Below, piece after piece: positions 1,377 to 13,400 of a DNA stretch of 64,000 nucleotides (position 1 is its first letter; each line of letters starts with the position of its first letter). Made by a program: the position numbers and the translations under genes. Source of the DNA: Chlorokybus atmophyticus. Its lineage: Eukaryota > Plantae > Mesostigma and Chlorokybus algae. Location: assembly GCA_009103225.1 (NCBI GenBank), contig RHPI01000797.1, positions 70,384-134,383 of the forward strand. The letters are read 5' to 3'. Below the pieces are notes generated by a model. The model searched no databases. It was given only the letters and a program-made list of their open reading frames with translations, and had not been told where the DNA came from.

Positions 1377-4300
1377 TCACAAGTGTGGTGGTTGAAAGCC
1401 GGTGGCAGGATGAGGTTTTGCTGGCTCGCTACTGCTGTTGTTGTTGTTGCCTCCATGTCTATGCGGATCCAGCGACGAGGCAGCCGCAGGTTGCAAGCTT
1501 TGGAAAGCAGAAGCCACTGAAGGAGTCATTGTCGTGGGCGGTGCTGTGCTGGTTGGTGCCGTGCTGGTTGTGGGTGGACTTGCGGGTATGCTGCCAGGAG
1601 CTGGCTGTTGAGACACGGACCTGGTCAGTGCTTGGGGTGGAGTTGGATCAGGTGGTGGTGTAGTGCTGGCTGGCGGGCTGGCAGTTGCTGCATCAACACC
1701 GGGCCTGGAAGGTTCGATGTCCATTGCCTGCGCCAGCTGCATTCGTCAATCAAAACAATAATAGCTCAGCAACACGCGCCAATGCTGCTAGCTCACCTCT
1801 GCATGATCAGCGTCTCGGTGTTCAGCGCCGTTGCGGTTGGATCCCGCTGCGGGCTCCTGAAAAGGCTATAGTTCAACATGCATGTGCATGTCAACCAACA
1901 CGCGCACGCACGTGCATACACGACACAAAGCACAGAGATTACAGCCATGATACATCAGTACAGCTATACTCTATTAACCAACACCATACTGCCCCAGACC
2001 ACAGGTGCAATGAAACAAGCAATGTGAGTTAGCATCAATCACAGGCTTCATGCATCACCTCTGTTGCCATGGGCTGCGCTGCACCCTCCTCTAGCTTGGC
2101 AGACTTTGGTCTAGGTTCCATGATAGAAGGCCTTCACGTGCAAAACGGATGTCCACATCAGTAACGCCAAGCCAATACTGTACATAAAGAGATGGTCTTA
2201 CCTGTGAACTGCGTGCTCCACGGTAACTCGGGTCTTTGATCGTGTATGATCATCGTCATCGCTATCTGACATCTCGCCGTCGATAGACTTCTTACTGCGA
2301 TACCTTTGATCAGCATCATCTTCATCCTGCACACACATACACAAGTGAGGCATGAATGCATTCGAATGTTGGCATGACACCCTTGAGCCAATGGTGTGTG
2401 AATCGAACCCACCTCCTCTGCAAGGGTGTGCTCCGCCGGGCGATCATGAAACTGTACACTGGGTGCTGCTGGCAACTTTGAAAGGTTGTCTAGCAGCCTT
2501 GTCCTACAATGCCATGTTGTTATGAGCTGCAATGCGCTGGATGAGAGCGTGCGCGCGCAGATAAACGCACGCACACACATATAGACACGCATCAAACGTG
2601 ACAGCCAATGCTGCGTACCTGATCTTATCAAGGTACTCTTTGGGGTTCATGTTCTCCATGTTGCTTGGAGATATGTGCAAAGCAAACTCCGGCCCAAAGT
2701 ACTCGTAGTAATCGTTCTGAGGCAGCCTGTCTTCGAGCTCCACTCCCAAAAGGCAAGCTGTCTACAGGAATCAAAGCATATTGTCATGAAAGCCAAACAA
2801 AACCACATCTTTTAGGTTAATCACACTAATCAACATCATGCTACCTCATAACACCAACACCGTGCCACGTTGCGAATAGTGTACCCGCCCCCTCCCAGCA
2901 CCAGCAGCGGGACGCCGTAGCTGGAGACCAGCTTGACGCATTCGGCGTGGCCTCTGATGGACAGATTGAAACAGCCAAGCCTGTCACCCGCCAACGAGTC
3001 TGCACCGCATTGCAGCACAATAGCGCCAGGTTGGTACACCTCCATCACCTTGGAGACAAAACACATTAGAGGCTAAACAACCACACCTAACGTGTTGGTT
3101 TGTTGTAAAGGGCGTGTGTGAACAAGTGCAGGACGACAGAGGTGCAGTGCATGATGTTGGATGATGTACTACGAGTTTGGCCTTTTGAACACATGCACAC
3201 ACGCGCGAACACGCTGAAGGCTTCTCACCTTATCAATGAGCGGCTTGAACAGCGAGTGGTAGCTATCGTCATCGATGCCATCTCTGAGTGGCACGTTCAA
3301 CGAGTAATACTTGCCACGGCTGTGTCCAACATCACCCAAATCACCCGTGCCTGGAAAGTACTCTCCAAACTTGTGGAAAGAGACGGTCATGACGCGATCA
3401 GTAGTGTAAAAGGCTTCTTCCACACCATCGCCATGATGGATATCAATGTCGATGTACAACACACGATAGTGGTATTTCAACAACTCCAGGATGGCGAGGT
3501 TGATATCATTTACGTAACAAAAGCCAGAGGCTTCATTCTTCTTAGCATGGTGCAACCCGCCGGACCAATTGATGGCCACGTCTGTCTGCTTGTGATTCAG
3601 CTTGATCGCACCACCAATCGAGCCTCCGGCATATGTTTGACAAAACCGAAACAAACCATCAAAGACGGGACTGTCCTCACCTGTAAACACACATGCCCAT
3701 TGACAACTCCCTTGATGATGCATCTTGTCACAACAGTACGTTGTCACGTTTTACATGATATTATTGTGCATCATCACAACTTACACGAAGCCGCTGACAA
3801 TGTGTGCACAACAACTGCTTCTTACCGACATTGAAGCGCTTCATGTTGCGTGCTTGGTCATGCTGAGCTTCTGGCACGATGGTTTTGAGAAACTCCACGT
3901 ACTCGTCCGTGTGAAACTTGCTCATGTCCTCTTCTGTGGCCAAGTGCGGTCGGAAGATCTCCAGCTCCTTGTGCAGGCCGTAGTGCAAGAGAAGGTTGTG
4001 TGTCATCCGCATCCGGTGCGGCTTCATCGGATGCCCTTGCCCGTAATAGTAGTTGCCCACATCCGGATCGTAGAAGTAACACACCTGAAGTTGTACCGAG
4101 TTGAGCCATAGTCAAGCAAGCAAGTCAGTCACTGGACCTGTCTACTTAAAAATGTAAACAAGTGCATATGGGTCAGCAGAGTACAAGCGTCAGCAACAAG
4201 CAAAGCATGCAAGCATACTACCGTCGTTCACATCAGCTTAACCTGTCCTATCACTGCATGCAAAGACTATAGCTTTCCTCTATAAGCACAAGCATATTTT

Positions 4301-5011: not shown

Positions 5012-7935
5012 ATGGCGGCGGTCGCAGGAGACGGCGGCGGCGATGGGGCAGGTGGTGACGTACGTGACCTGTTTGGCCCAGGCAATGAGGTTTACATGCG
5101 CACGCAACCGCTTAGCCCTTGGCCACTCCCGGGCGGTTCGCTCAGCTTCCCCTCCGCCGCCACCGCTGCTCCCACGCCGCCACCGAGAGCTCCATCAGCT
5201 GGTTCTGAAACCCTAGATTACCACGTTACAAACCCCAGCCGGCATGCATCAGCAGCATTAAGCAAGCAAACATGGCAGCGTAGCTAGCTAGCATTGTGTT
5301 GATTTGCGACATGCATGCGCATGCATAGGCACTTCCCATGCATAAAATAACAGGTTGGTTACATCTACCAGACGACACCATTGAGCGTTCGTGACTTAGT
5401 ATGCAATCGGCGTGGAGCTTGCATGCCCAATTTTTGTAATATGTGACCACTCTTGAGGACGCATGACTCAACCATACATCACTTCTGCAATTGCACATGA
5501 TTTAGTGAAGGAGTTGTTTGACATCTGGCCTGTGTTTGACATCAAGTGCTAGCGTGTGTGAAGCATGCGTGCATGAGAAACATCATCCGCAAGCATGCAC
5601 TGATGCAAGCTGCATATGCTTATCGCCTGTAGCTGTTACTTGTTCACATGCAGCATTGTTCATCACACGTCATGCGGCACGTGAAGCATGGCATTTACTA
5701 AGCGAGCTTTTCCAAGTTTGAGCTTTTGGCCTCCAGTTGCATGCATCGCCAATAGCAAGTGCTGCATGAGCATCCTATGTTAACTCTGTTAACCCTCGAT
5801 GCCCTGGACTTGGCAGCTGAGGGCAGGCGTTTAGAAGCCGCGGTGCAGTTAGCGCAGCAGTTAGCTGCGCAGACCCAAGATGATGATGGTGCAGAGCACG
5901 CGGACAACATGCCGAGCGGCAGCGGGCGCACATACAAGCAGCCCTCTGCTCGCTTTGCACGACCCACACCGTCATCAAATGCCGCCAGGCCAGAACAACA
6001 TCAACAACTATTCCCGCCGACGACAATGTACCCCACTATAACGCCTGGAACAGGTGTGTATCTTGCGAGCAGCTGCAATCGACACGCGTCCTGTCTTTGC
6101 ATGTTCGTGTGCTTGTGTAAACAAACATGTTGCGCGGTTGTTGTATCTGCAGTTTGCGTGGCTGCGTTCAACATGGGGCCTGTCGGACACCTGAACACCG
6201 CGCTGCAGCGTAAGACAGACTTTCAGCAGGTGCTTGTTGACAGCAAGCGCTTGTGTGCATATGTGTGCGCTACAATGTGCCGTGCACGCTTGTGAACCAC
6301 ATTTGTTCAGATGCACGACCTTACACTGTGTGCCCCATGCAGCCAAAGCAGATCGCTTGCTTCAGCAAAAGTGCTGATGGCTCCGTCACCTACGACGATC
6401 GCCAGCTGGTTGGTGCTTGATTCATTGTGCATGCATCATTGAGACCAGATACAAACTAAGCAATGCTTTCATAAACCTTGGCAGCGCATGTTTCATCCAC
6501 CAAAGCTGGGAGCAGACCTCAGCCAGGGCATCGACACTTACATCGCCAAGAGCCGTGGTATTGTGCTGCATGCGCGAACAACATGGTTTGCAAGCCATGC
6601 ACGAGTTCCATGTGGCCTGCATGTATGCGTGCTGAATTTCGTGTTGCTCCTGCCTTGCATGCAGGCAAGGGTGTTGGAGAGGCGGCACCGTTGGGGGATG
6701 TATTGGACGGCCTACTTGCACACAATGCTTCCCTTCAAGACGTGCACTTTGTGGTATGGGTGCAAGTGTTGCAGTCTGTGCCTGCAGTGTTGCAACGTAG
6801 TATACATGTACACTTACGCCATGCTCTCTGATCTCTTCCACAGACTTACCGCAACAATCTCAACAAGGTTAGCTGTCTTCTTGTTGAGTGCTGTACCGCA
6901 TGCCCCTTGGACGGGCACAACATGACAGTACACACAATGTGCTTTGTTGTGGTGCACTAAGCTGCCATACTCACACAGATTCTGGGAACTGCCTACAACC
7001 GTGTGGACCCTTGGGAGATGGGAGTGGAGCGGCATGGCAGCACAATCTTCCTCGACGTGCATCAGATGGATGAAAGCCACAGAGAGAGTGACTGGCAACG
7101 CCGTTGGTATGTACAATGTCGACATTGTAGTCAACTTCTTTTTGCTGTATACAATGGGCAGTGTGGTGACCAATTTGTCTGTTGTTCTTCAGCATGTACT
7201 GGGGCTACTCTTTCGAGCGCTTTTGCACTGCGCCTGAAGATTCGACAGAGCCTGTGAATGCCAACGAGGAGTTCTGCTCGATACTGCGCACGAAACTCGG
7301 GCTGCATCGACTTGTTCTCGCTGCTGGTATGCTACGACAACCCGTACAACATGTGCTGATACACACCGCAGGCTAGTTACTGACACTTTTGATACGGGTA
7401 GAGGTTGACTGCTACAGGGTGGACTCCAAGCAGCGCCGGCAGTTTATGGAACTCAAAACCCACGGCGATCTCACAACCCCGAAAAAGGCAGCGGCTTTTG
7501 AGGATCGCAAGCTGAGACAGTTTTGGATCCAGGCGAGTTATTACTTCATTCGTACTGCCCGGATGTTGCCTTGCTGTGCATTATGATGATCATCACACCC
7601 AACACTCTTTTGGCGTGGTGCAGTCTTTCCTTGCAGGCATTGGGCGCATCGTGGTGGGCTTTCGCGACGACAAGGGGCGCCTCTTGAAGCTGGAAGACTT
7701 GGACACTTTCTTAATACCGAGGCGTGCGAAGGGCAAGTGGGAAGCTGCTGTCTGCTTGGCTTTTGCCGATGACGTCTTGACCTGGTTGCAACACAACGTG
7801 CTTGAGAACTGCCAATATGTACTGAAGTTTGACCCAAACTCCAACTTGCTGGAACTGTGTCAAGTGCACACTGGTATACCTGCATTGCAAGATACGCAAA
7901 GGTTGCAAGCGCTGCAAGCAGCAGCGCCTTCCTGA
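5012..7935 (+). CDS. DXO1: DXO/RAI1-family decapping 5'-3' exoribonuclease with an N-terminal extension (start codon tentative)
   Basis: Spliced exons give QPKQIACFSK, FHPPKLGADLSQG, TYRNNLNK, YWGYSFERFCT, NANEEFCSILRTKLG, EVDC, FMELKT, FWIQ/SFLAGIGRIVVGFRDDKG, ending TGA at 7933-7935. The 5' exons (ATG 5012, acceptor 5755) are phase-compatible but unverified. Confidence 0.9.
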
Positions 7936-8375
7936 CTTGTTATGTGCCTGAACTGTACCAAAGGGGTGTGCTACTATTCCGGCATGCATGTGTGGTTCAT
8001 TTAACTGAGACAGACACAGGTCACACACGCGTAACATATAGGATGCAGGGATTGTGGCATTGTGCTGAGTGTCAACATTTGCGTGATACCAAGCATAGCG
8101 TTCTGGATTACACAAAACACTCACACTTGCCAGTACACTTACTATACGTATACGACTACAGCAAGCAACATGCTTACTAACGCCGGTTGCATTGTTTGTG
8201 CGTTAGTCAGGGAGCAAGGAGCTGCTGATCACAATAAACACATACTGCAATAGTCAGTCAGCAAGATGCTGCTCGGAAGACAGCCATGCTATACACAAAC
8301 ATCACACCAACCTTTCTCTATAACTTCCAAGACAAGCACGCAACACGTGCACAACTCTTGCGGCAATCACCACAG

Positions 8376-8380
8376 TTACA
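8376..8380 (-). promoter_or_regulatory. Putative TGTAA polyadenylation signal directly after the PPCDC stop
   Basis: TGTAA follows the TAA immediately. The same pentamer lies shortly after the OTU-UBC stop (14164-14168, +) and the RTF1 stop (51066-51070, -). UGUAA is the known chlorophyte poly(A) signal. Confidence 0.55.
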
Positions 8381-8941
8381 TTATTCAATTTGTCTTTGCA
8401 CATGCTGTTGGACAAACTGAACAAGTGTAGCCAGCTCAGCCATAGCTCCATTGCCTACATCTCCGCAGGCCAAGCGCTTTGACACGGGAGGGATGATCTG
8501 CACTCCCAGCGACTGCAATGCAGACAGATGGCGCTCAGTGAAGGGACTCTCCCACATGAAAGTGTTCATGGCCGGTGCAACCAGCAGCGGCTTCGAGAAA
8601 TCCCAAGCGCGTACGATGCACGTAAGCAAGTTGTCGCACATGCCGCAGGCAATCTTCGCCATGGTGTTGGCGGACAGCGGCGCGACCACAAGGATGTCGG
8701 CCCATCTCCTCAACTCAATATGAAGCACATCATCGCCTATCTTGGTCCACTGGCTCCATTCATCTTCATCCGTCAACAGAGGGACTCCCTCAGGCAACAA
8801 GCTGCGGTTGACAAAATGAAGTGCCGCACGTGTTGTCACAACTTTAACGTCTGCTGTCTGCGACAGTGCAGTGGCAATATGTGCAAGCTTGATGCCTGCA
8901 ACACTGCCACTTGCGCCCAACAAGATGCGAGGCCTTTGCAT
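8381..8941 (-). CDS. PPCDC: Phosphopantothenoylcysteine decarboxylase (HAL3/CoaC flavoprotein), single exon, 186 aa
   Basis: Intronless ORF: RPRILLGASGSVA, LHIELRRWADILVVAPLSANTMAK, CDNLLTCIVRAWD, PAMNTFMW, KRLACGDVGNGAM. Confidence 0.96.
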   Translation of the reverse strand: MQRPRILLGASGSVAGIKLAHIATALSQTADVKVVTTRAALHFVNRSLLPEGVPLLTDEDEWSQWTKIGDDVLHIELRRWADILVVAPLSANTMAKIACGMCDNLLTCIVRAWDFSKPLLVAPAMNTFMWESPFTERHLSALQSLGVQIIPPVSKRLACGDVGNGAMAELATLVQFVQQHVQRQIE

Positions 8942-9020
8942 GGTCAACTGCAGCAATCATTCCCAAAGCTGGGGAGGTAAAAGACTCCTTGATTCAAGCC
9001 AGCAACCGCCGTGCTCTAAA

Positions 9021-9858
9021 CTAGTTCTCGCCTCTCAGCAAAGCCGCATCAATCTGTCGCCTCTCTCGCAATCGCTCTTTCTCCAACTTGCTTTTCTCGA
9101 AGTTGGCTGCCCGCTTCAGCTGCTTCTGCACACGCCAACAGTTATGCCTAATGCCATACACCTACCGCTGTGGACAACGCATTGAACAAGTGTGCAACGA
9201 CCCCAGTCTTTAATACAAATCTGAACTGCACTGCATAGAGCTGGCCAGCAGCAGCCTTGACTCAGACAGTTTGACTTGGCGCTTGACTCCAAGGAGTGCA
9301 TGGCAAAGGTCTATTGTGGAAAATGCTTGCACATCATTAGCCTTGAGCGCACCAGTATGCCAACGAAAATTTGCGTACCTCGCGGCGAAAGCACGCATCT
9401 AATGCTTCTTTGTGCTTGTTGCACACTCCAACAAACTTCTGCACAGGGTTTTCGTCGTGGCACTGCACCAAGCCTTCAATCTCCTGCACACGCCTTCATT
9501 GTTGTGTCCGGTTTCTTGACCTCGGCAACTAGCGACTCACAAACAATTTACGCATGCAATGCGGAAACTACATGTACAACACCCTAACAGACTAAGCAGG
9601 GTGGATGATCAGTCGAGCGTAGCGCTCAGCGAGCGTGAAAGTGACTCTGCACATCACGACACAATGCAAGCCCGGTCCACTGTGGCTCCCACGAATTGCA
9701 ACGGTTAAACCGGCAATACTTGAGCAAGACTGCGCTATGCAGCTAACCAGAGAAGGCTGACAAGTGAACAAGTGAACAAGTGAGATGCTGTAATTGTCTC
9801 TATTTGGCCTCACCTGCGTACACAGCGGATGCTTGTGCAACGACAGAGGCGGATGCAT
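9021..9858 (-). CDS. CMC2: CMC2-type twin-Cys mitochondrial cytochrome c oxidase assembly protein, 84 aa, 3 exons
   Basis: Exons 9858-9814, 9483-9379 and 9125-9021, all phase 0 with GT-AG, give MHPPLSLHKHPLCTQEIEGLVQCHDENPVQKFVGVCNKHKEALDACFRREKQLKRAANFEKSKLEKERLRERRQIDAALLRGEN*. This has the MHPPL..HxHPxC start, two CX9C motifs and the KRxxNFExSK motif typical of CMC2. Confidence 0.93.
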
Positions 9859-10487
9859 ACCCAGGTACACAGCTGTCTAAGTCCCCTTCTTCCAGCTGCC
9901 GCTCGTCCTCCTCGTCCTTCTCGTCCTCCTTCGCCTCCACCTCAGCCGGCGCCGAACACAGCTGTGCTGCAGGTGACGTACCACTTAGCGTTTCTCTGGG
10001 TTGGTTGCATGCGTTGCCCGCCTGTGCTGGCGCCCTGTTGCCTCGCAGTGCGCAACTCTCAGGGTCAACTTGGCACGGCATCGATGATTTCTTGCGTGGA
10101 TGCTACCATCGGCGACGGCGGTGACGTGCAGGACCACGAGGAGGAGGTCGTCGTGCTTGCTGTGCATGCTCGCTGCTGGTCTATGTCCAGTTGCCTTCCT
10201 GCCTCGTTTAAGCAGCCTGCGCGAAGTGAGCTTCGCTCCGCTTGCCTGCATGTCATGCCAGGCCAGAAGCATGCGGTAGCACCAAGCTTGCAGCAGCCGC
10301 TTCTGATCCCTGAAGGCGTAGCGTCTATATCTTTTTCAAATTCAGCTTAGTTAGAGCTGGAGTTTAAACTGGATCTGACTTTCGTGCATGTCGCATGGTC
10401 AAGTGGCCCAGGCTGCATTTGGGTCATGCGCTCGGCCAGTTCTATCGTGATTAATTAGCAGTTCAGCTGATATTGCACTTATTGACC

Positions 10488-13400
10488 ATGGGTCAAGTGT
10501 GTTCGGCTCCTGGCTCACGATCACGCTCCATGTCGGAGCCTTTGAACCAGCTGTCAAGGGCGTACAGCGTACACAACCATGCGCACCACTCCGCTCCGGG
10601 ACACGCCCTCAACCAATCAGCAAATGCCCTTAAACACACAAACTCAGCGCCAACGTCACCCTCTGCAGCGGCACTGCAGCGGTTGCAAAGCACGTTCAAG
10701 GTGAGCTAGGCTGCGTACATACTCAGCAACATTTTGCAACGCATGTGTTCTACCAGTTCATCTAGTGCTTGCTTACGGACACGTTCTTCTGGTGTATACA
10801 ATCGATCGAATTGGTTTGGTGGTTGCCTAGGGGTGTATGTCTCAGGTTGTCCAGCAGGATTACGCTGTTATTGGCTACTCATCCGCTTGAGTCAATCACA
10901 GTAACGTGGGTTGTGTTTCAGAACCTCACCCCAGATGAGAGGGATCAATTGCTGCGCGATGACCTTCTGCTGCTGGCGCCAGTGATTCAAGAGGCCTTTC
11001 ACACACTGGTATGTACTTACTTACTCTGCGTATCTTTGTGCGTGCGCAAAAGGACATACGGACAGCATTGTTTGGGACTATTGAGTCTGGCCAGCATGCT
11101 GCATGCGCTTTACGCAAGTGTGCATGAGACTCTCAGTGACTTGCTTCTGTTACCTGCTAATAACTCACGCTACTTGTTGTGCAGCCAGTGACCACCTGCA
11201 CATTCATAGTCAAGTACGATGAGCACATAGATCCAGGAACCACCCAATACTTGTGGACAACACTTGATGCCTGGCGCACAACACGTGGCGCAGTGATATT
11301 ACCCCTGCAGGTACTTCAGTAAGCAGAGGAGCTTCTGGACTTTCAAGTGGTTGTCAGGTTGCTGAACATGCCTTTCCTCAGACTACTGGAGATGGAAGTT
11401 GTTTGCTCCACGCTGTGTCCCGAGGAGTCTGGGGCGTGGAGGTTTTCTCTGATATCCTGCGCCACTTTGTGTGGGAGGAACTCAACCAAAACCGTGCCTG
11501 GTAGGGTTCATCAGTCCCACTGGATTCTTTTTTGCAAATCACATGGGACACATCCTGTGCTATCCCGTCAGGTATACTGAGCGGGTTGGGGAGGCAGATT
11601 TAGCAGAGGCATTGGTGCAAGCAGCCTCACCGCACGAGTATCTATCCAACCTACACATTGTTGCACTCGCGCACGTGCTCGGGCGGCCTATCATCCTGTA
11701 CGATTCACAAGTATGCACTGTAATGCAATGTATTTTGCATACTCCAAGTCGCTTTCAACAACTGTCCTATGTACTTTTAGGAAGCTATGGCGCAATACGG
11801 CACAGGCTATTATGGAGTGGCTGGGCTGTTTGTGCCATCTCGCATTGCAAAGGCGAGGTGGTACGCTTGGCCAGTAGTTATCAGCTGGGCAAGGTATGAG
11901 GTGATCGCTCGTAACCCTGTGTTGGAGTCGAGCCTTTGCTGATCTGGCTTGCGTGCTGTGCCTTGTGCAGCCAGCATCATAATCACTACGTACCGCTGGC
12001 CTGGACACAAGGCAAGCAGATCCTGTGGCCCTGGCCTGAGGAGCTGCTTAACGCGAACGCGACAAAACAGTTGAGACCCAGCGACTCGTTTGCGGGATCG
12101 GTTGGTGCCGGACCATTCGCAGTCAGCCCGGAGGTAGATGTCCAGTACAGCACAACTTCATGGTAGCAGTGATAGCGTTCATGGTAGCAATGGTGGCCGC
12201 CACCCTGCTCTCATCGATCATGGTGTTATGACCGTTCGCTGCTAACTGTGCTGTGGCGCTAATAATAGTGCACCACTTAGCTCAGCTCATTCATGCAGAC
12301 AAGGATGTGGTTGAGAAAGAGCATGCGAAGGTCGCGGCTCGAAGAGCCGACATTTGTGCTTGATCTGGTTGCAAAGGTGTGCAACGTCGATGAAGTTGAG
12401 GCATATACCCGCTGTAGTGTCTCTGCCTAGCTCATCACATTATATGCGTGCAGTTGCGCAATGAGGTGATAACAACAGAAGGCCATCTGCTTGCAAGAGC
12501 ATTGGCAGCGGCAACAGAGGGCGCAACAACAGTGCAGCCGCCTGATCTGCATGGTTCAACAGCTGCAACACCAGGGCTTGATGTCGAGAAGAGCGTGCTC
12601 ACCAGTGTGCCATTGGCATTGAACGCGGCACACAAGTGGCGCAAAACCGTTGCAGTCAACAAGGTGCCCTTGCGTCGTGCACAGTGCAAAATTGATACCG
12701 GTTCATTGCGCGCACATGTACACGCACATTTTGCATGACCAACCGTATGCATTACTTCAATGGTTTACCACCCATCAACATATCATCTTACTTGGCATAC
12801 TGCCGCTGTTGCATTTACTGGCTGCAGGTGCGTGCGCGACCTATGAAACGGAGGCCGCCCGCACCCTTTGAGATGGACTGGCCAGCCGCCAGCGCACCTG
12901 AAGCGCCACTGCACACCCGGCAAAAGTCGTTCAGAGTGTCGGCGCGCGACATCGCGCACTCCAAGGCTGCTGAAGTGCTGCAACACAGTAATGGCAGCAG
13001 CCGACAGGAGAGGTATGGTGTCTGCAATACTGCTAAGGCGCTGTTATCTGTAGTATAATAAACCTACATTGATTGCTGGCTGCTTTCAGGTATGCGCATG
13101 CCTCTCCAGCAGGAGTCGCGCATGACGCTGGCCATGCATGGGCTGAGCTTGCGCGAGATATATCAGAGAGACGCAGAGGGTTGGCTGTCGCAGATGTTGC
13201 ATTGGAAGCCCTCCAACAGGTGCGTAGAGGGTGAGACGAGTAGGATGAAGCCCATGCATGTATGAGTACTGATTGTTTGTGTGTTTATACCAGCCCTTGC
13301 CGTCGAGCTACCATCAGGTCACCAGTGAGAGCCGCACCAGGCTGATGGCTGCAGCCACAGCCATGGTGCGCATATCGCAAGAGTTGCGATTGCTCATGCG

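What the first reader, a model, noticed from the sequence alone, without database searches (positions are those of the whole stretch)
8376..9858. Probable bicistronic CMC2-PPCDC transcription unit
Seen: the CMC2 stop (9021) is only 79 nt upstream of the PPCDC ATG (8941) on the same strand. The spacer has no TGTAA, whereas TGTAA directly follows the PPCDC stop. The upstream ORF is short (84 aa) and PPCDC is intronless in an otherwise intron-dense region. Known: polycistronic nuclear mRNAs with a short upstream ORF and leaky scanning are reported in Chlamydomonas and Chromochloris. Inference: one mRNA encodes a COX-assembly factor and a CoA-biosynthesis enzyme. Alternative: the CAG at 8950-8948 (TTGCTGCAG|TTG ACC ATG) is a phase-0 acceptor that could splice CMC2 exon 1 or 2 in frame onto PPCDC, giving a fusion isoform. 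A few short out-of-frame ATG ORFs in CMC2 and the spacer count against simple leaky scanning.
Basis: partly seen in the sequence, partly recalled or inferred. Interest (0 to 1): 0.75.

Follow-up and report, generated by a model that had tools for sequence, protein, structure and literature searches.

The report
Two-gene CMC2–PPCDC messenger RNA
A small mitochondrial assembly-factor gene (CMC2) and a coenzyme-A synthesis gene (PPCDC) lie 79 bases apart and appear together on one spliced RNA; the same pairing is already listed for Auxenochlorella and is also found here in Klebsormidium, liverworts and mosses.

Summary
On the minus strand, a three-exon, 84-residue CMC2 gene (ATG 9858, stop ending at 9021) lies 79 nt upstream of an intronless 186-residue PPCDC gene (ATG 8941, stop 8383-8381).

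Spliced transcript contigs from two studies carry CMC2, the spacer and PPCDC in one piece. A roughly 91%-identical relative bridges the spacer too. Contigs are not single molecules, so co-transcription is strongly suggested but not proven.

The gene pair is not new. Supplementary datasets of Duenas et al. 2025 (PMC11892635) list CMC2/COAC1 as a bicistron of Auxenochlorella, in the same order and colinear in five other trebouxiophytes.

What I found no paper describing is its reach into streptophytes. The genome looks like a streptophyte alga; an earlier scan note says Chlorokybus, which I only partly checked. CMC2 lies directly upstream of PPCDC in Klebsormidium, Marchantia and Sphagnum, and on RNA contigs of a moss and two unidentified streptophytes. 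The link is absent in tomato, in a lycophyte and, apart from a possible decayed relic, in Physcomitrium.

Leaky scanning is plausible but not clean: three AUGs lie between the two starts and one overlaps the PPCDC start. The proposed fusion isoform has no support.

The scan has noted two other bicistrons in this genome, with different gene pairs.

The parts
9859..9921 (-). 5' untranslated leader (minimum extent, at least 63 nt)
   Evidence: The X2 contig, record 5, reaches about 9921. It holds no AUG.
9814..9858 (-). CMC2 exon 1, coding (15 codons, MHPPLSLHKHPLCTQ). The start context is ggtATGc.
   Evidence: The MHPPL N-terminus is shared by all plant CMC2 proteins aligned.
9484..9813 (-). CMC2 intron 1 (330 nt, GT..AG, phase 0)
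   Evidence: The joint 9482/9813 is seen in X1, X2 and X3.
9379..9483 (-). CMC2 exon 2 (35 codons), which carries three of the four twin-Cx9C cysteines (C23, C35, C45); the first, C13, lies in exon 1
   Evidence: Pfam Cmc1 at E 1.5e-7; alignment.
9126..9378 (-). CMC2 intron 2 (253 nt, GT..AG, phase 0)
   Evidence: The joint 9125/9379 is seen in X1, X2 and X3. Low-depth unspliced pieces are X1 record 3 and X3 record 9.
9021..9125 (-). CMC2 exon 3, coding part (34 codons plus TAG at 9023-9021). It begins the last exon, which also holds the spacer and PPCDC.
8942..9020 (-). 79-nt inter-ORF spacer with no TGTAA or AATAAA. It contains one AUG at 8963-8961.
   Evidence: It is bridged without a break by contigs of X1, X2 and X3.
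8847..8963 (-). Out-of-frame 38-codon ORF that starts in the spacer (context ggaATGa) and overlaps the PPCDC start. It is expected to dampen PPCDC translation.
8948..8950 (-). No evidence of use was found.
   Evidence: No joint occurs here, and no fused relatives appear.
8381..8941 (-). PPCDC (HAL3/CoaC-type flavoprotein) ORF, 186 aa, intronless. The start context is accATGc.
   Evidence: Pfam PF02441 at E 2e-31. AtHAL3a at 264 bits, with His74, Asn126 and Cys159 aligned to AtHAL3a positions 90, 142 and 175.
8207..8380 (-). 3' untranslated region. TGTAA is at 8380-8376. Contig ends are at 8356 (X3), 8311 (X2) and 8207 (X1).

Best explanation
This is a bicistronic nuclear gene. One RNA polymerase II transcript starts at or upstream of about 9921, in a short region shared with a divergent plus-strand gene. 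Two phase-0 introns are removed from its CMC2 part. Its last exon contains the end of CMC2, a 79-nt spacer, the whole intronless PPCDC ORF and the 3' UTR. Both ORFs encode intact, conserved proteins: a twin-Cx9C factor of the mitochondrial intermembrane space used in cytochrome-oxidase assembly, and the cytosolic flavoenzyme of coenzyme-A synthesis. PPCDC is most likely reached by ribosomes that scan past the sub-optimal CMC2 start (G at -3, C at +4) to the better PPCDC start (A at -3). Two weak-context AUGs inside CMC2 open 9- and 4-codon ORFs that end early, so ribosomes that use them could still re-initiate. A spacer AUG 19 nt upstream of the PPCDC start opens an overlapping ORF that should lower PPCDC output. 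The locus has the same gene pair and order as the published CMC2/COAC1 bicistron of Auxenochlorella, so it looks like an arrangement inherited from early green plants. Shown: gene order, splicing, contig continuity across the spacer, and conservation of the arrangement. Inferred: that single molecules carry both ORFs, that no separate PPCDC mRNA dominates, and the translation mechanism.
For:: X2 record 5 (1029 nt) and X1 record 2 each carry CMC2 exons 1-3, the spacer and PPCDC with both introns removed. X3 record 8 (a relative) bridges 8356-9127. The runs are cDNA-like, because 15 joints with GT..AG or CT..AC ends remove introns of three genes on both strands. PMC11892635 Datasets S01B, S02B and S05 list A. 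protothecoides ORF 1 = Cmc1-like (276 nt) and ORF 2 = PPCDC, with an inter-ORF of 2 nt and 0 extra AUGs. The pair is colinear in Prototheca, two Chlorella species (PacBio support in C. sorokiniana), Nannochloris and Coccomyxa; in Klebsormidium, CMC2 (2868-3704) lies upstream of PPCDC (from 4001); in Marchantia, CMC2 exons end 163 nt before the PPCDC ATG, and RNA contig L005 runs unbroken from CMC2 exon 3 through the spacer into spliced PPCDC; in two Sphagnum genomes the gap is about 107 nt. RNA contigs L003, L009-L011 and L014 hold both ORFs. ORF 2 starts have a purine at -3 in all four taxa, while ORF 1 always has C at +4 and has a pyrimidine at -3 in two taxa; the L003 spacer of 351 nt has no AUG (P 0.014).
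Against: Short-read contigs cannot prove a single molecule. The X1 contig also runs on into the divergent plus-strand gene (9813-10698), which cannot be on the same mRNA, so continuity alone can mislead. X3 record 8 and Marchantia L005 both stop at the 5' edge of CMC2 exon 3, which would also fit an internal start site. AUG depletion before PPCDC is not significant here (3 observed against 5.8 expected, P 0.16) and is absent in L009 (9 AUGs), so leaky scanning is not the clean fit it is in Auxenochlorella. The spacer AUG overlaps the PPCDC start. No ribosome or protein data were available.
Confidence: 0.75

Rival explanations
1. These are two tightly packed monocistronic genes. CMC2 mRNA ends in or just past the spacer, PPCDC mRNA starts in CMC2 exon 3 or the spacer, and the assembler merged the overlapping ends. 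Alternatively, the bicistronic RNA is only a minor read-through product.
For: Contigs are not molecules. The X1 contig wrongly joins the divergent neighbour too. X3 record 8 and Marchantia L005 end at the exon-3 boundary. The genome annotations on record for Klebsormidium and Sphagnum call the two as separate genes, and Marchantia's annotation names CMC2 as a gene of its own (Mp_6g03370).
Against: The spacer is only 79 nt and holds no poly(A) signal motif. Bridging recurs in three assemblies here and in four other taxa. The adjacency and order are kept from trebouxiophytes to mosses. The Auxenochlorella locus is on the paper's curated master list of bicistronic loci and has PacBio support in Chlorella sorokiniana. 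Breaks at splice junctions are the usual effect of spliced and unspliced paths in an assembly graph, and low-depth unspliced pieces are present.
Confidence: 0.13
2. The RNA is bicistronic, but PPCDC is translated mainly by re-initiation, either after the short internal ORFs or after CMC2 itself, rather than by leaky scanning.
For: Three AUGs lie between the two starts here and nine in L009. The two internal ORFs here are 9 and 4 codons long and end 175 and 94 nt before the PPCDC AUG, which is a geometry that allows re-initiation.
Against: Re-initiation after an 84-codon ORF is inefficient by established knowledge of eukaryotic translation. Duenas et al. 2025 showed leaky scanning experimentally for other Auxenochlorella bicistrons, and the orthologous locus there has a 2-nt spacer and no extra AUG. 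The start contexts here follow the weak-then-strong pattern.
Confidence: 0.2
3. A fusion isoform exists: the donor of CMC2 exon 1 or exon 2 splices to the CAG at 8950-8948, giving an in-frame CMC2(N-terminus)-PPCDC protein.
For: Both donors and the CAG are phase 0 and in frame with the PPCDC ATG.
Against: No such joint appears in X1, X2 or X3, although contigs drop rare variants. None of the 120 best PPCDC relatives carries a CMC2-like N-terminus or a twin Cx9C motif. In the other taxa the RNA contigs keep a stop codon and a spacer between the ORFs.
Confidence: 0.04

Closest known systems
CMC2/COAC1 bicistronic locus of Auxenochlorella protothecoides (UTEX250_A10.26400.1 / UTEX250_A10.26395.1; Duenas et al. 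2025, PMC11892635, Datasets S01B, S02B, S05)
   Same: It has the same two protein families in the same order: a short Cmc1-like ORF first (276 nt there, 255 nt here) and PPCDC second. The 5' UTR is short in both (37 nt there, at least 63 nt here). The five bases before the PPCDC ATG and the two after it are identical (TGACC ATG CA).
   Different: The spacer is 2 nt there and 79 nt here. There are no extra AUGs before ORF 2 there and three here, one of them overlapping the PPCDC start. ORF 2 is longer there (1100 nt) than here (561 nt). That locus is on the paper's curated master list of bicistronic loci (the Iso-Seq basis is my reading of the paper's methods, not checked); this one rests on short-read contigs. 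The two lineages, Trebouxiophyceae and a streptophyte alga, lie on opposite sides of the deepest split in green plants. I had no Auxenochlorella sequence, so orthology rests on family names and order.
CDC26-TTM3 bicistron (Lorenzo-Orts et al. 2019, as cited in PMC11892635)
   Same: A very short conserved ORF sits upstream of a metabolic enzyme on one mRNA, and the pairing is conserved between green algae and land plants.
   Different: The genes are different. CDC26-TTM3 persists in Arabidopsis, whereas CMC2-PPCDC was found linked only up to bryophytes and not in the lycophyte or tomato loci examined.
Polycistronic nuclear mRNAs of chlorophytes in general (Gallaher et al. 2021, PMC7896298)
   Same: ORF 1 is short, the inter-ORF is short, and both ORFs are conserved protein-coding genes. 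Mitochondrial small proteins are frequent as ORF 1 in that set as well.
   Different: Those loci were defined by Iso-Seq in Chlamydomonas and Chromochloris. This pair is not reported for Chlamydomonas in the conservation table, and the host here is a streptophyte alga.

Membership tests
Green-lineage bicistronic nuclear mRNA (as defined by Gallaher 2021 and Duenas 2025) | Two conserved, non-overlapping protein-coding ORFs on one strand with a short inter-ORF | tested here: met
   The ORFs are 84 aa and 186 aa with a 79-nt spacer, and both match curated families.
Green-lineage bicistronic nuclear mRNA (as defined by Gallaher 2021 and Duenas 2025) | A single mature transcript molecule contains both ORFs (full-length reads) | tested here: inconclusive
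   Spliced short-read contigs from two studies and one relative span both ORFs, but contigs are not molecules and no long reads were available.
Green-lineage bicistronic nuclear mRNA (as defined by Gallaher 2021 and Duenas 2025) | Expression is exclusively polycistronic, with no monocistronic mRNA for ORF 2 | not testable with these tools
   This needs cap-mapped 5' ends and 3'-end sequencing.
Green-lineage bicistronic nuclear mRNA (as defined by Gallaher 2021 and Duenas 2025) | Both ORFs are translated | not testable with these tools
   There are no Ribo-seq or proteome data. Indirect support comes from both proteins being intact, with the catalytic or cysteine motifs conserved.
Green-lineage bicistronic nuclear mRNA (as defined by Gallaher 2021 and Duenas 2025) | Leaky-scanning design: a weak ORF 1 start, a stronger ORF 2 start and few AUGs before ORF 2 | tested here: inconclusive
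   The contexts fit: ggtATGc for ORF 1 and accATGc for ORF 2. AUG depletion is not significant (3 against 5.8 expected, P 0.16), and one AUG overlaps the ORF 2 start.
Counterpart of the Auxenochlorella CMC2/COAC1 bicistron | Same two families in the same order and on the same strand | tested here: met
   The paper's datasets give ORF 1 as Cmc1-like and ORF 2 as PPCDC, and the window has the same order. No sequence-level comparison with the algal proteins was made.
CMC2 (COX assembly mitochondrial protein 2, Pfam Cmc1 PF08583) | Twin Cx9C motif and family profile match | tested here: met
   Exon 2 hits Cmc1 at E 1.5e-7. C13-x9-C23 and C35-x9-C45 align with proteins from moss to Ricinus that sources name CMC2.
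PPCDC / HAL3 (Pfam Flavoprotein PF02441) | Full-length match to a solved PPCDC, with the catalytic His, Asn and Cys present | tested here: met
   The match to 1E20 AtHAL3a is E 7.6e-78 over residues 2-177. His74, Asn126 and Cys159 align to positions 90, 142 and 175. The catalytic role of those residues is from my own knowledge of AtHAL3a.

The most novel reading that the evidence does not exclude
CMC2-PPCDC is an ancestral bicistron of all green plants. It was kept for roughly a billion years in trebouxiophytes, Chlorokybus, Klebsormidium, liverworts and mosses, and was broken up several times (Mesotaenium, Physcomitrium with a decayed relic, vascular plants). That would make it the second such deep case after CDC26-TTM3, and one that can be tested genetically in Marchantia. 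The long retention would imply selection for translational coupling, for example PPCDC dosage being set by how often ribosomes stop at CMC2.
Probability: 0.55. Interest if true: 0.62.

Novelty: new member of a known kind. Interest (0 to 1): 0.48.

Why it matters
Bicistronic nuclear mRNAs are established in chlorophyte algae. The only one the held literature describes as shared with land plants is CDC26-TTM3. If CMC2-PPCDC is a second one, it shows that the mechanism is ancestral to green plants rather than a chlorophyte speciality. It also offers natural variants of the same gene pair, with spacers from 2 to about 400 nt and from 0 to 9 intervening AUGs, for testing leaky scanning against re-initiation. 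Finally, it places a testable case in the genetic models Marchantia and Sphagnum. There is a practical consequence too: the window's own PPCDC protein is absent from the large protein collection, which may reflect gene predictors mis-handling such loci.

Tried and rejected
- **Gallaher 2021 supplements.** No supplementary files of PMC7896298 are held, so I could not check whether Chromochloris has this pair.
- **The window's own PPCDC in the protein collections.** It is not among the homologue hits and has no exact-match contig, so I could not fetch the transcript contigs themselves or read their ends.
- **Fusion isoform.** No joint at the proposed acceptor and no fused relatives were found, so I rejected it as a main product.
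- **AUG depletion as a signature.** It is not significant in the window (P 0.16). It is significant only in L003 and absent in L009.
- **Structured RNA or a snoRNA in the introns or spacer.** Rfam gave no match at E up to 0.1 over 7900-10600.
- **Literature on the pair.** Searches for the pair as a bicistron in plants found nothing in main texts. One search was a malformed query.
- **Cryptomeria CMC2.** The look-up found no record.
- **Organism names.** Run and organism names are coded, so I could not confirm Chlorokybus directly. I verified only that the nearest PPCDC relatives are streptophytes and that the run pattern fits the Chlorokybus cryptic-species study: one label, and strains about 90% alike in a 2021 study (PMC8611356).
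- **The joined CMC2 model.** I sent it to no search tool. Database searches used single exons by reference or relatives' contiguous ORFs. The exons were joined only inside local scripts, to count AUGs and make a local alignment.

Full report
**The observation**

On the minus strand the window holds a three-exon ORF. Its exons are 9858-9814, 9483-9379 and 9125-9021, ending in TAG at 9023-9021. Seventy-nine bases downstream lies an uninterrupted ORF from ATG 8941 to TAA 8383-8381. The spacer (9020-8942) has no TGTAA or AATAAA, and TGTAA (8380-8376) follows the second stop directly.

The downstream protein (186 aa) matches Pfam Flavoprotein at E 2e-31. It aligns over residues 2-177 with the solved Arabidopsis PPCDC AtHAL3a at E 7.6e-78. 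His74, Asn126 and Cys159 sit opposite AtHAL3a positions 90, 142 and 175; that these are the catalytic residues is my own knowledge.

Exon 2 of the upstream gene matches Pfam Cmc1 at E 1.5e-7. The 84-aa product was joined only inside a local script. It aligns along its whole length with plant proteins that sources name 'COX assembly mitochondrial protein 2 homolog', including the MHPPL N-terminus and both Cx9C pairs.

**Transcript evidence**

The single run search found two small runs of one organism from two studies that hold half or more of the sampled words (X1 0.67, X2 0.51), and two more runs of the 2021 study that hold few (X3 0.10, X4 0.03) and turned out to be about 90% alike. The runs are labelled 'RNA?' only by guess. 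When laid on 6800-12000, their contigs skip 15 intervals with GT..AG or CT..AC ends in three genes on both strands, so they are cDNA assemblies.

- **X2 record 5** (1029 nt) equals 8311-9125, 9379-9482 and 9813-about 9921. That is PPCDC, the spacer and all three CMC2 exons, with both introns removed.
- **X1 record 2** shows the same structure.
- **X3 record 8**, about 9% diverged, covers 8356-9127 across the spacer, with a TT insertion behind 8987. X3 also shows both CMC2 joints.
- No joint lands on the CAG at 8950-8948.
- Low-depth pieces (X1 record 3, X3 record 9) are unspliced intron 2.

Three caveats apply:

- Contigs are not molecules.
- X1 record 2 continues through 9813-10698 into the divergent plus-strand gene, which cannot be the same mRNA. 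Continuity alone is therefore not proof.
- X3 record 8 stops at the exon-3 boundary.

The 3' ends of the contigs lie 20, 65 and 169 nt beyond the TGTAA. That motif therefore does not by itself define the 3' end.

**The host organism**

An earlier scan note (s1-174110) calls the genome Chlorokybus. I could verify only two things. The best PPCDC relatives are all streptophytes, led by Klebsormidium at 72%, then Mesotaenium, Spirogloea and land plants. The run pattern, one organism label with strains about 90% alike in a 2021 study, fits the Chlorokybus cryptic-species work (PMC8611356).

**What is already published**

Duenas et al. 2025 (PMC11892635) list UTEX250_A10.26400.1 (Cmc1-like, mitochondrial) and UTEX250_A10.26395.1 (PPCDC) as the bicistronic locus 'CMC2/COAC1' of Auxenochlorella protothecoides. 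The details are ORF 1 of 276 nt, ORF 2 of 1100 nt, a 5' UTR of 37 nt, an inter-ORF of 2 nt and no extra start codon before ORF 2. The pair is colinear in Prototheca cutis, Chlorella sorokiniana (PacBio), C. vulgaris, Nannochloris and Coccomyxa, with no entry for Chlamydomonas.

The pair appears only in the supplementary datasets. No main text in the held library mentions it. [quoted passage not shown]

**Conservation in streptophytes**

| Taxon | Evidence | Result |
|---|---|---|
| Klebsormidium nitens | genome | An 87-aa Cmc1 gene (2868-3704) lies on the same strand just before PPCDC (from 4001) |
| Marchantia | genome (L004) | Three CMC2 exons with the product of Mp_6g03370 end 163 nt before the PPCDC ATG |
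| Marchantia | RNA contig (L005) | Matches 5765-6353 without a break, from CMC2 exon 3 through the spacer into PPCDC exon 1, then splices to PPCDC exon 2 |
| Sphagnum (two genomes) | genome | CMC2 lies about 107 nt before PPCDC |
| Two unidentified streptophytes | RNA contigs L003 and L009-L011 | Both ORFs present, with spacers of about 350-400 nt and 142 nt |
| A moss (PPCDC 82% identical to Physcomitrium) | RNA contig L014 | Both ORFs present, with a spacer of 73-82 nt |
| Tomato | genome | No CMC2 within 5 kb upstream of PPCDC |
| Diphasiastrum (lycophyte) | genome | No PPCDC within 6 kb downstream of CMC2 |
| Mesotaenium | source names only | The two genes carry different scaffold names |
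| Physcomitrium | genome and RNA contigs | The PPCDC leader keeps only a weak exon-2-like stretch with the cysteines replaced (E 0.006-0.03) |

The two phase-0 CMC2 intron positions are shared by the window, Marchantia, Sphagnum and Diphasiastrum. Klebsormidium lacks the first intron.

**Mechanism**

In the spliced RNA the CMC2 start is ggtATGc and the PPCDC start is accATGc. In the other three taxa, ORF 1 also has C at +4, which is forced by the conserved Met-His. ORF 1 has a pyrimidine at -3 in two of them, while ORF 2 always has a purine at -3. This matches the weak-then-strong design tested by Duenas et al.

The window nevertheless has three intervening AUGs:

- Two have T at -3 and open 9- and 4-codon ORFs that end well before PPCDC.
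- One lies in the spacer (8963-8961, ggaATGa) and opens a 38-codon ORF that overlaps the PPCDC start.

Three AUGs against 5.8 expected is not a significant depletion (P 0.16). L003 is strongly depleted (1 against 7.4, P 0.002, with none in a 351-nt spacer). L009 is not depleted at all, with 9 AUGs.

I therefore favour leaky scanning with some damping by the overlapping ORF, and I keep re-initiation as a live alternative. One inference: because PPCDC is intronless here, no exon junction lies downstream of the CMC2 stop. That would spare the RNA from junction-dependent nonsense-mediated decay, unlike the intron-bearing PPCDC genes of Marchantia, Sphagnum and Klebsormidium.

**Fusion isoform**

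The geometry is right, because both donors and the CAG at 8950-8948 are phase 0 and in frame. However, no joint supports it. None of the 120 best PPCDC relatives carries a CMC2-like N-terminus.

**Verdict**

The phenomenon and this very gene pair are already on record for trebouxiophyte algae, so the locus is a new member of a known kind.

The added value is its presence in an early-branching streptophyte alga, Klebsormidium, liverworts and mosses. That points to an arrangement dating back to the common ancestor of green plants, later lost in the vascular plants examined (a lycophyte and tomato). Two other bicistronic mRNAs with different gene pairs were noted earlier in this genome by the scan (s1-186367, s1-078875); I did not test them.

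Noticed in passing
L007:261-353 (also L008:238-330 and L006:5498-5590): The 5' leader of Physcomitrium PPCDC holds a stretch resembling CMC2 exon 2 in which both cysteines are replaced (tblastn E 0.006-0.03 in a tiny database). It may be a decayed relic of the lost upstream cistron.
   Followed up: partly
window 9813-10698: The X1 contig runs without a break from CMC2 exon 1 into the divergent plus-strand gene (the OTU-E2 gene of note s1-174110), whereas X2 leaves 9922-10358 uncovered. This could be overlapping divergent transcription from a region of at most about 440 nt, or carry-over of unspliced RNA or DNA.
   Followed up: no
window 8937-8946: The ten bases TGACC ATG CA around the PPCDC start are identical to the ORF 2 start context listed for the Auxenochlorella locus, where TGA is the CMC2 stop and CC is the 2-nt spacer. 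This may be coincidence or a relic of a tighter ancestral junction.
   Followed up: no
L002:1-420: One RNA contig (ERR12684109) has a different 5' part that replaces the first 15 CMC2 codons. This is a retained first intron or an alternative first exon, so a variant without an intact CMC2 start exists in that species.
   Followed up: no
window 7533-7623: The convergent plus-strand gene (exons 6977-7105, 7192-7325, 7401-7529 and 7621 onward) has one intron that reads GC..AG once the 3-nt ambiguity of the joint is resolved.
   Followed up: partly
L001:2868-3017: Klebsormidium CMC2 has lost the first of the two phase-0 introns. Those intron positions are otherwise shared by the window, Marchantia, Sphagnum and Diphasiastrum.
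   Followed up: partly
window 6977-11900 (runs X3, X4): Runs filed under the same organism label in the 2021 study differ from the window by about 8-10% in exons. This fits deeply diverged cryptic species rather than strains.
   Followed up: no
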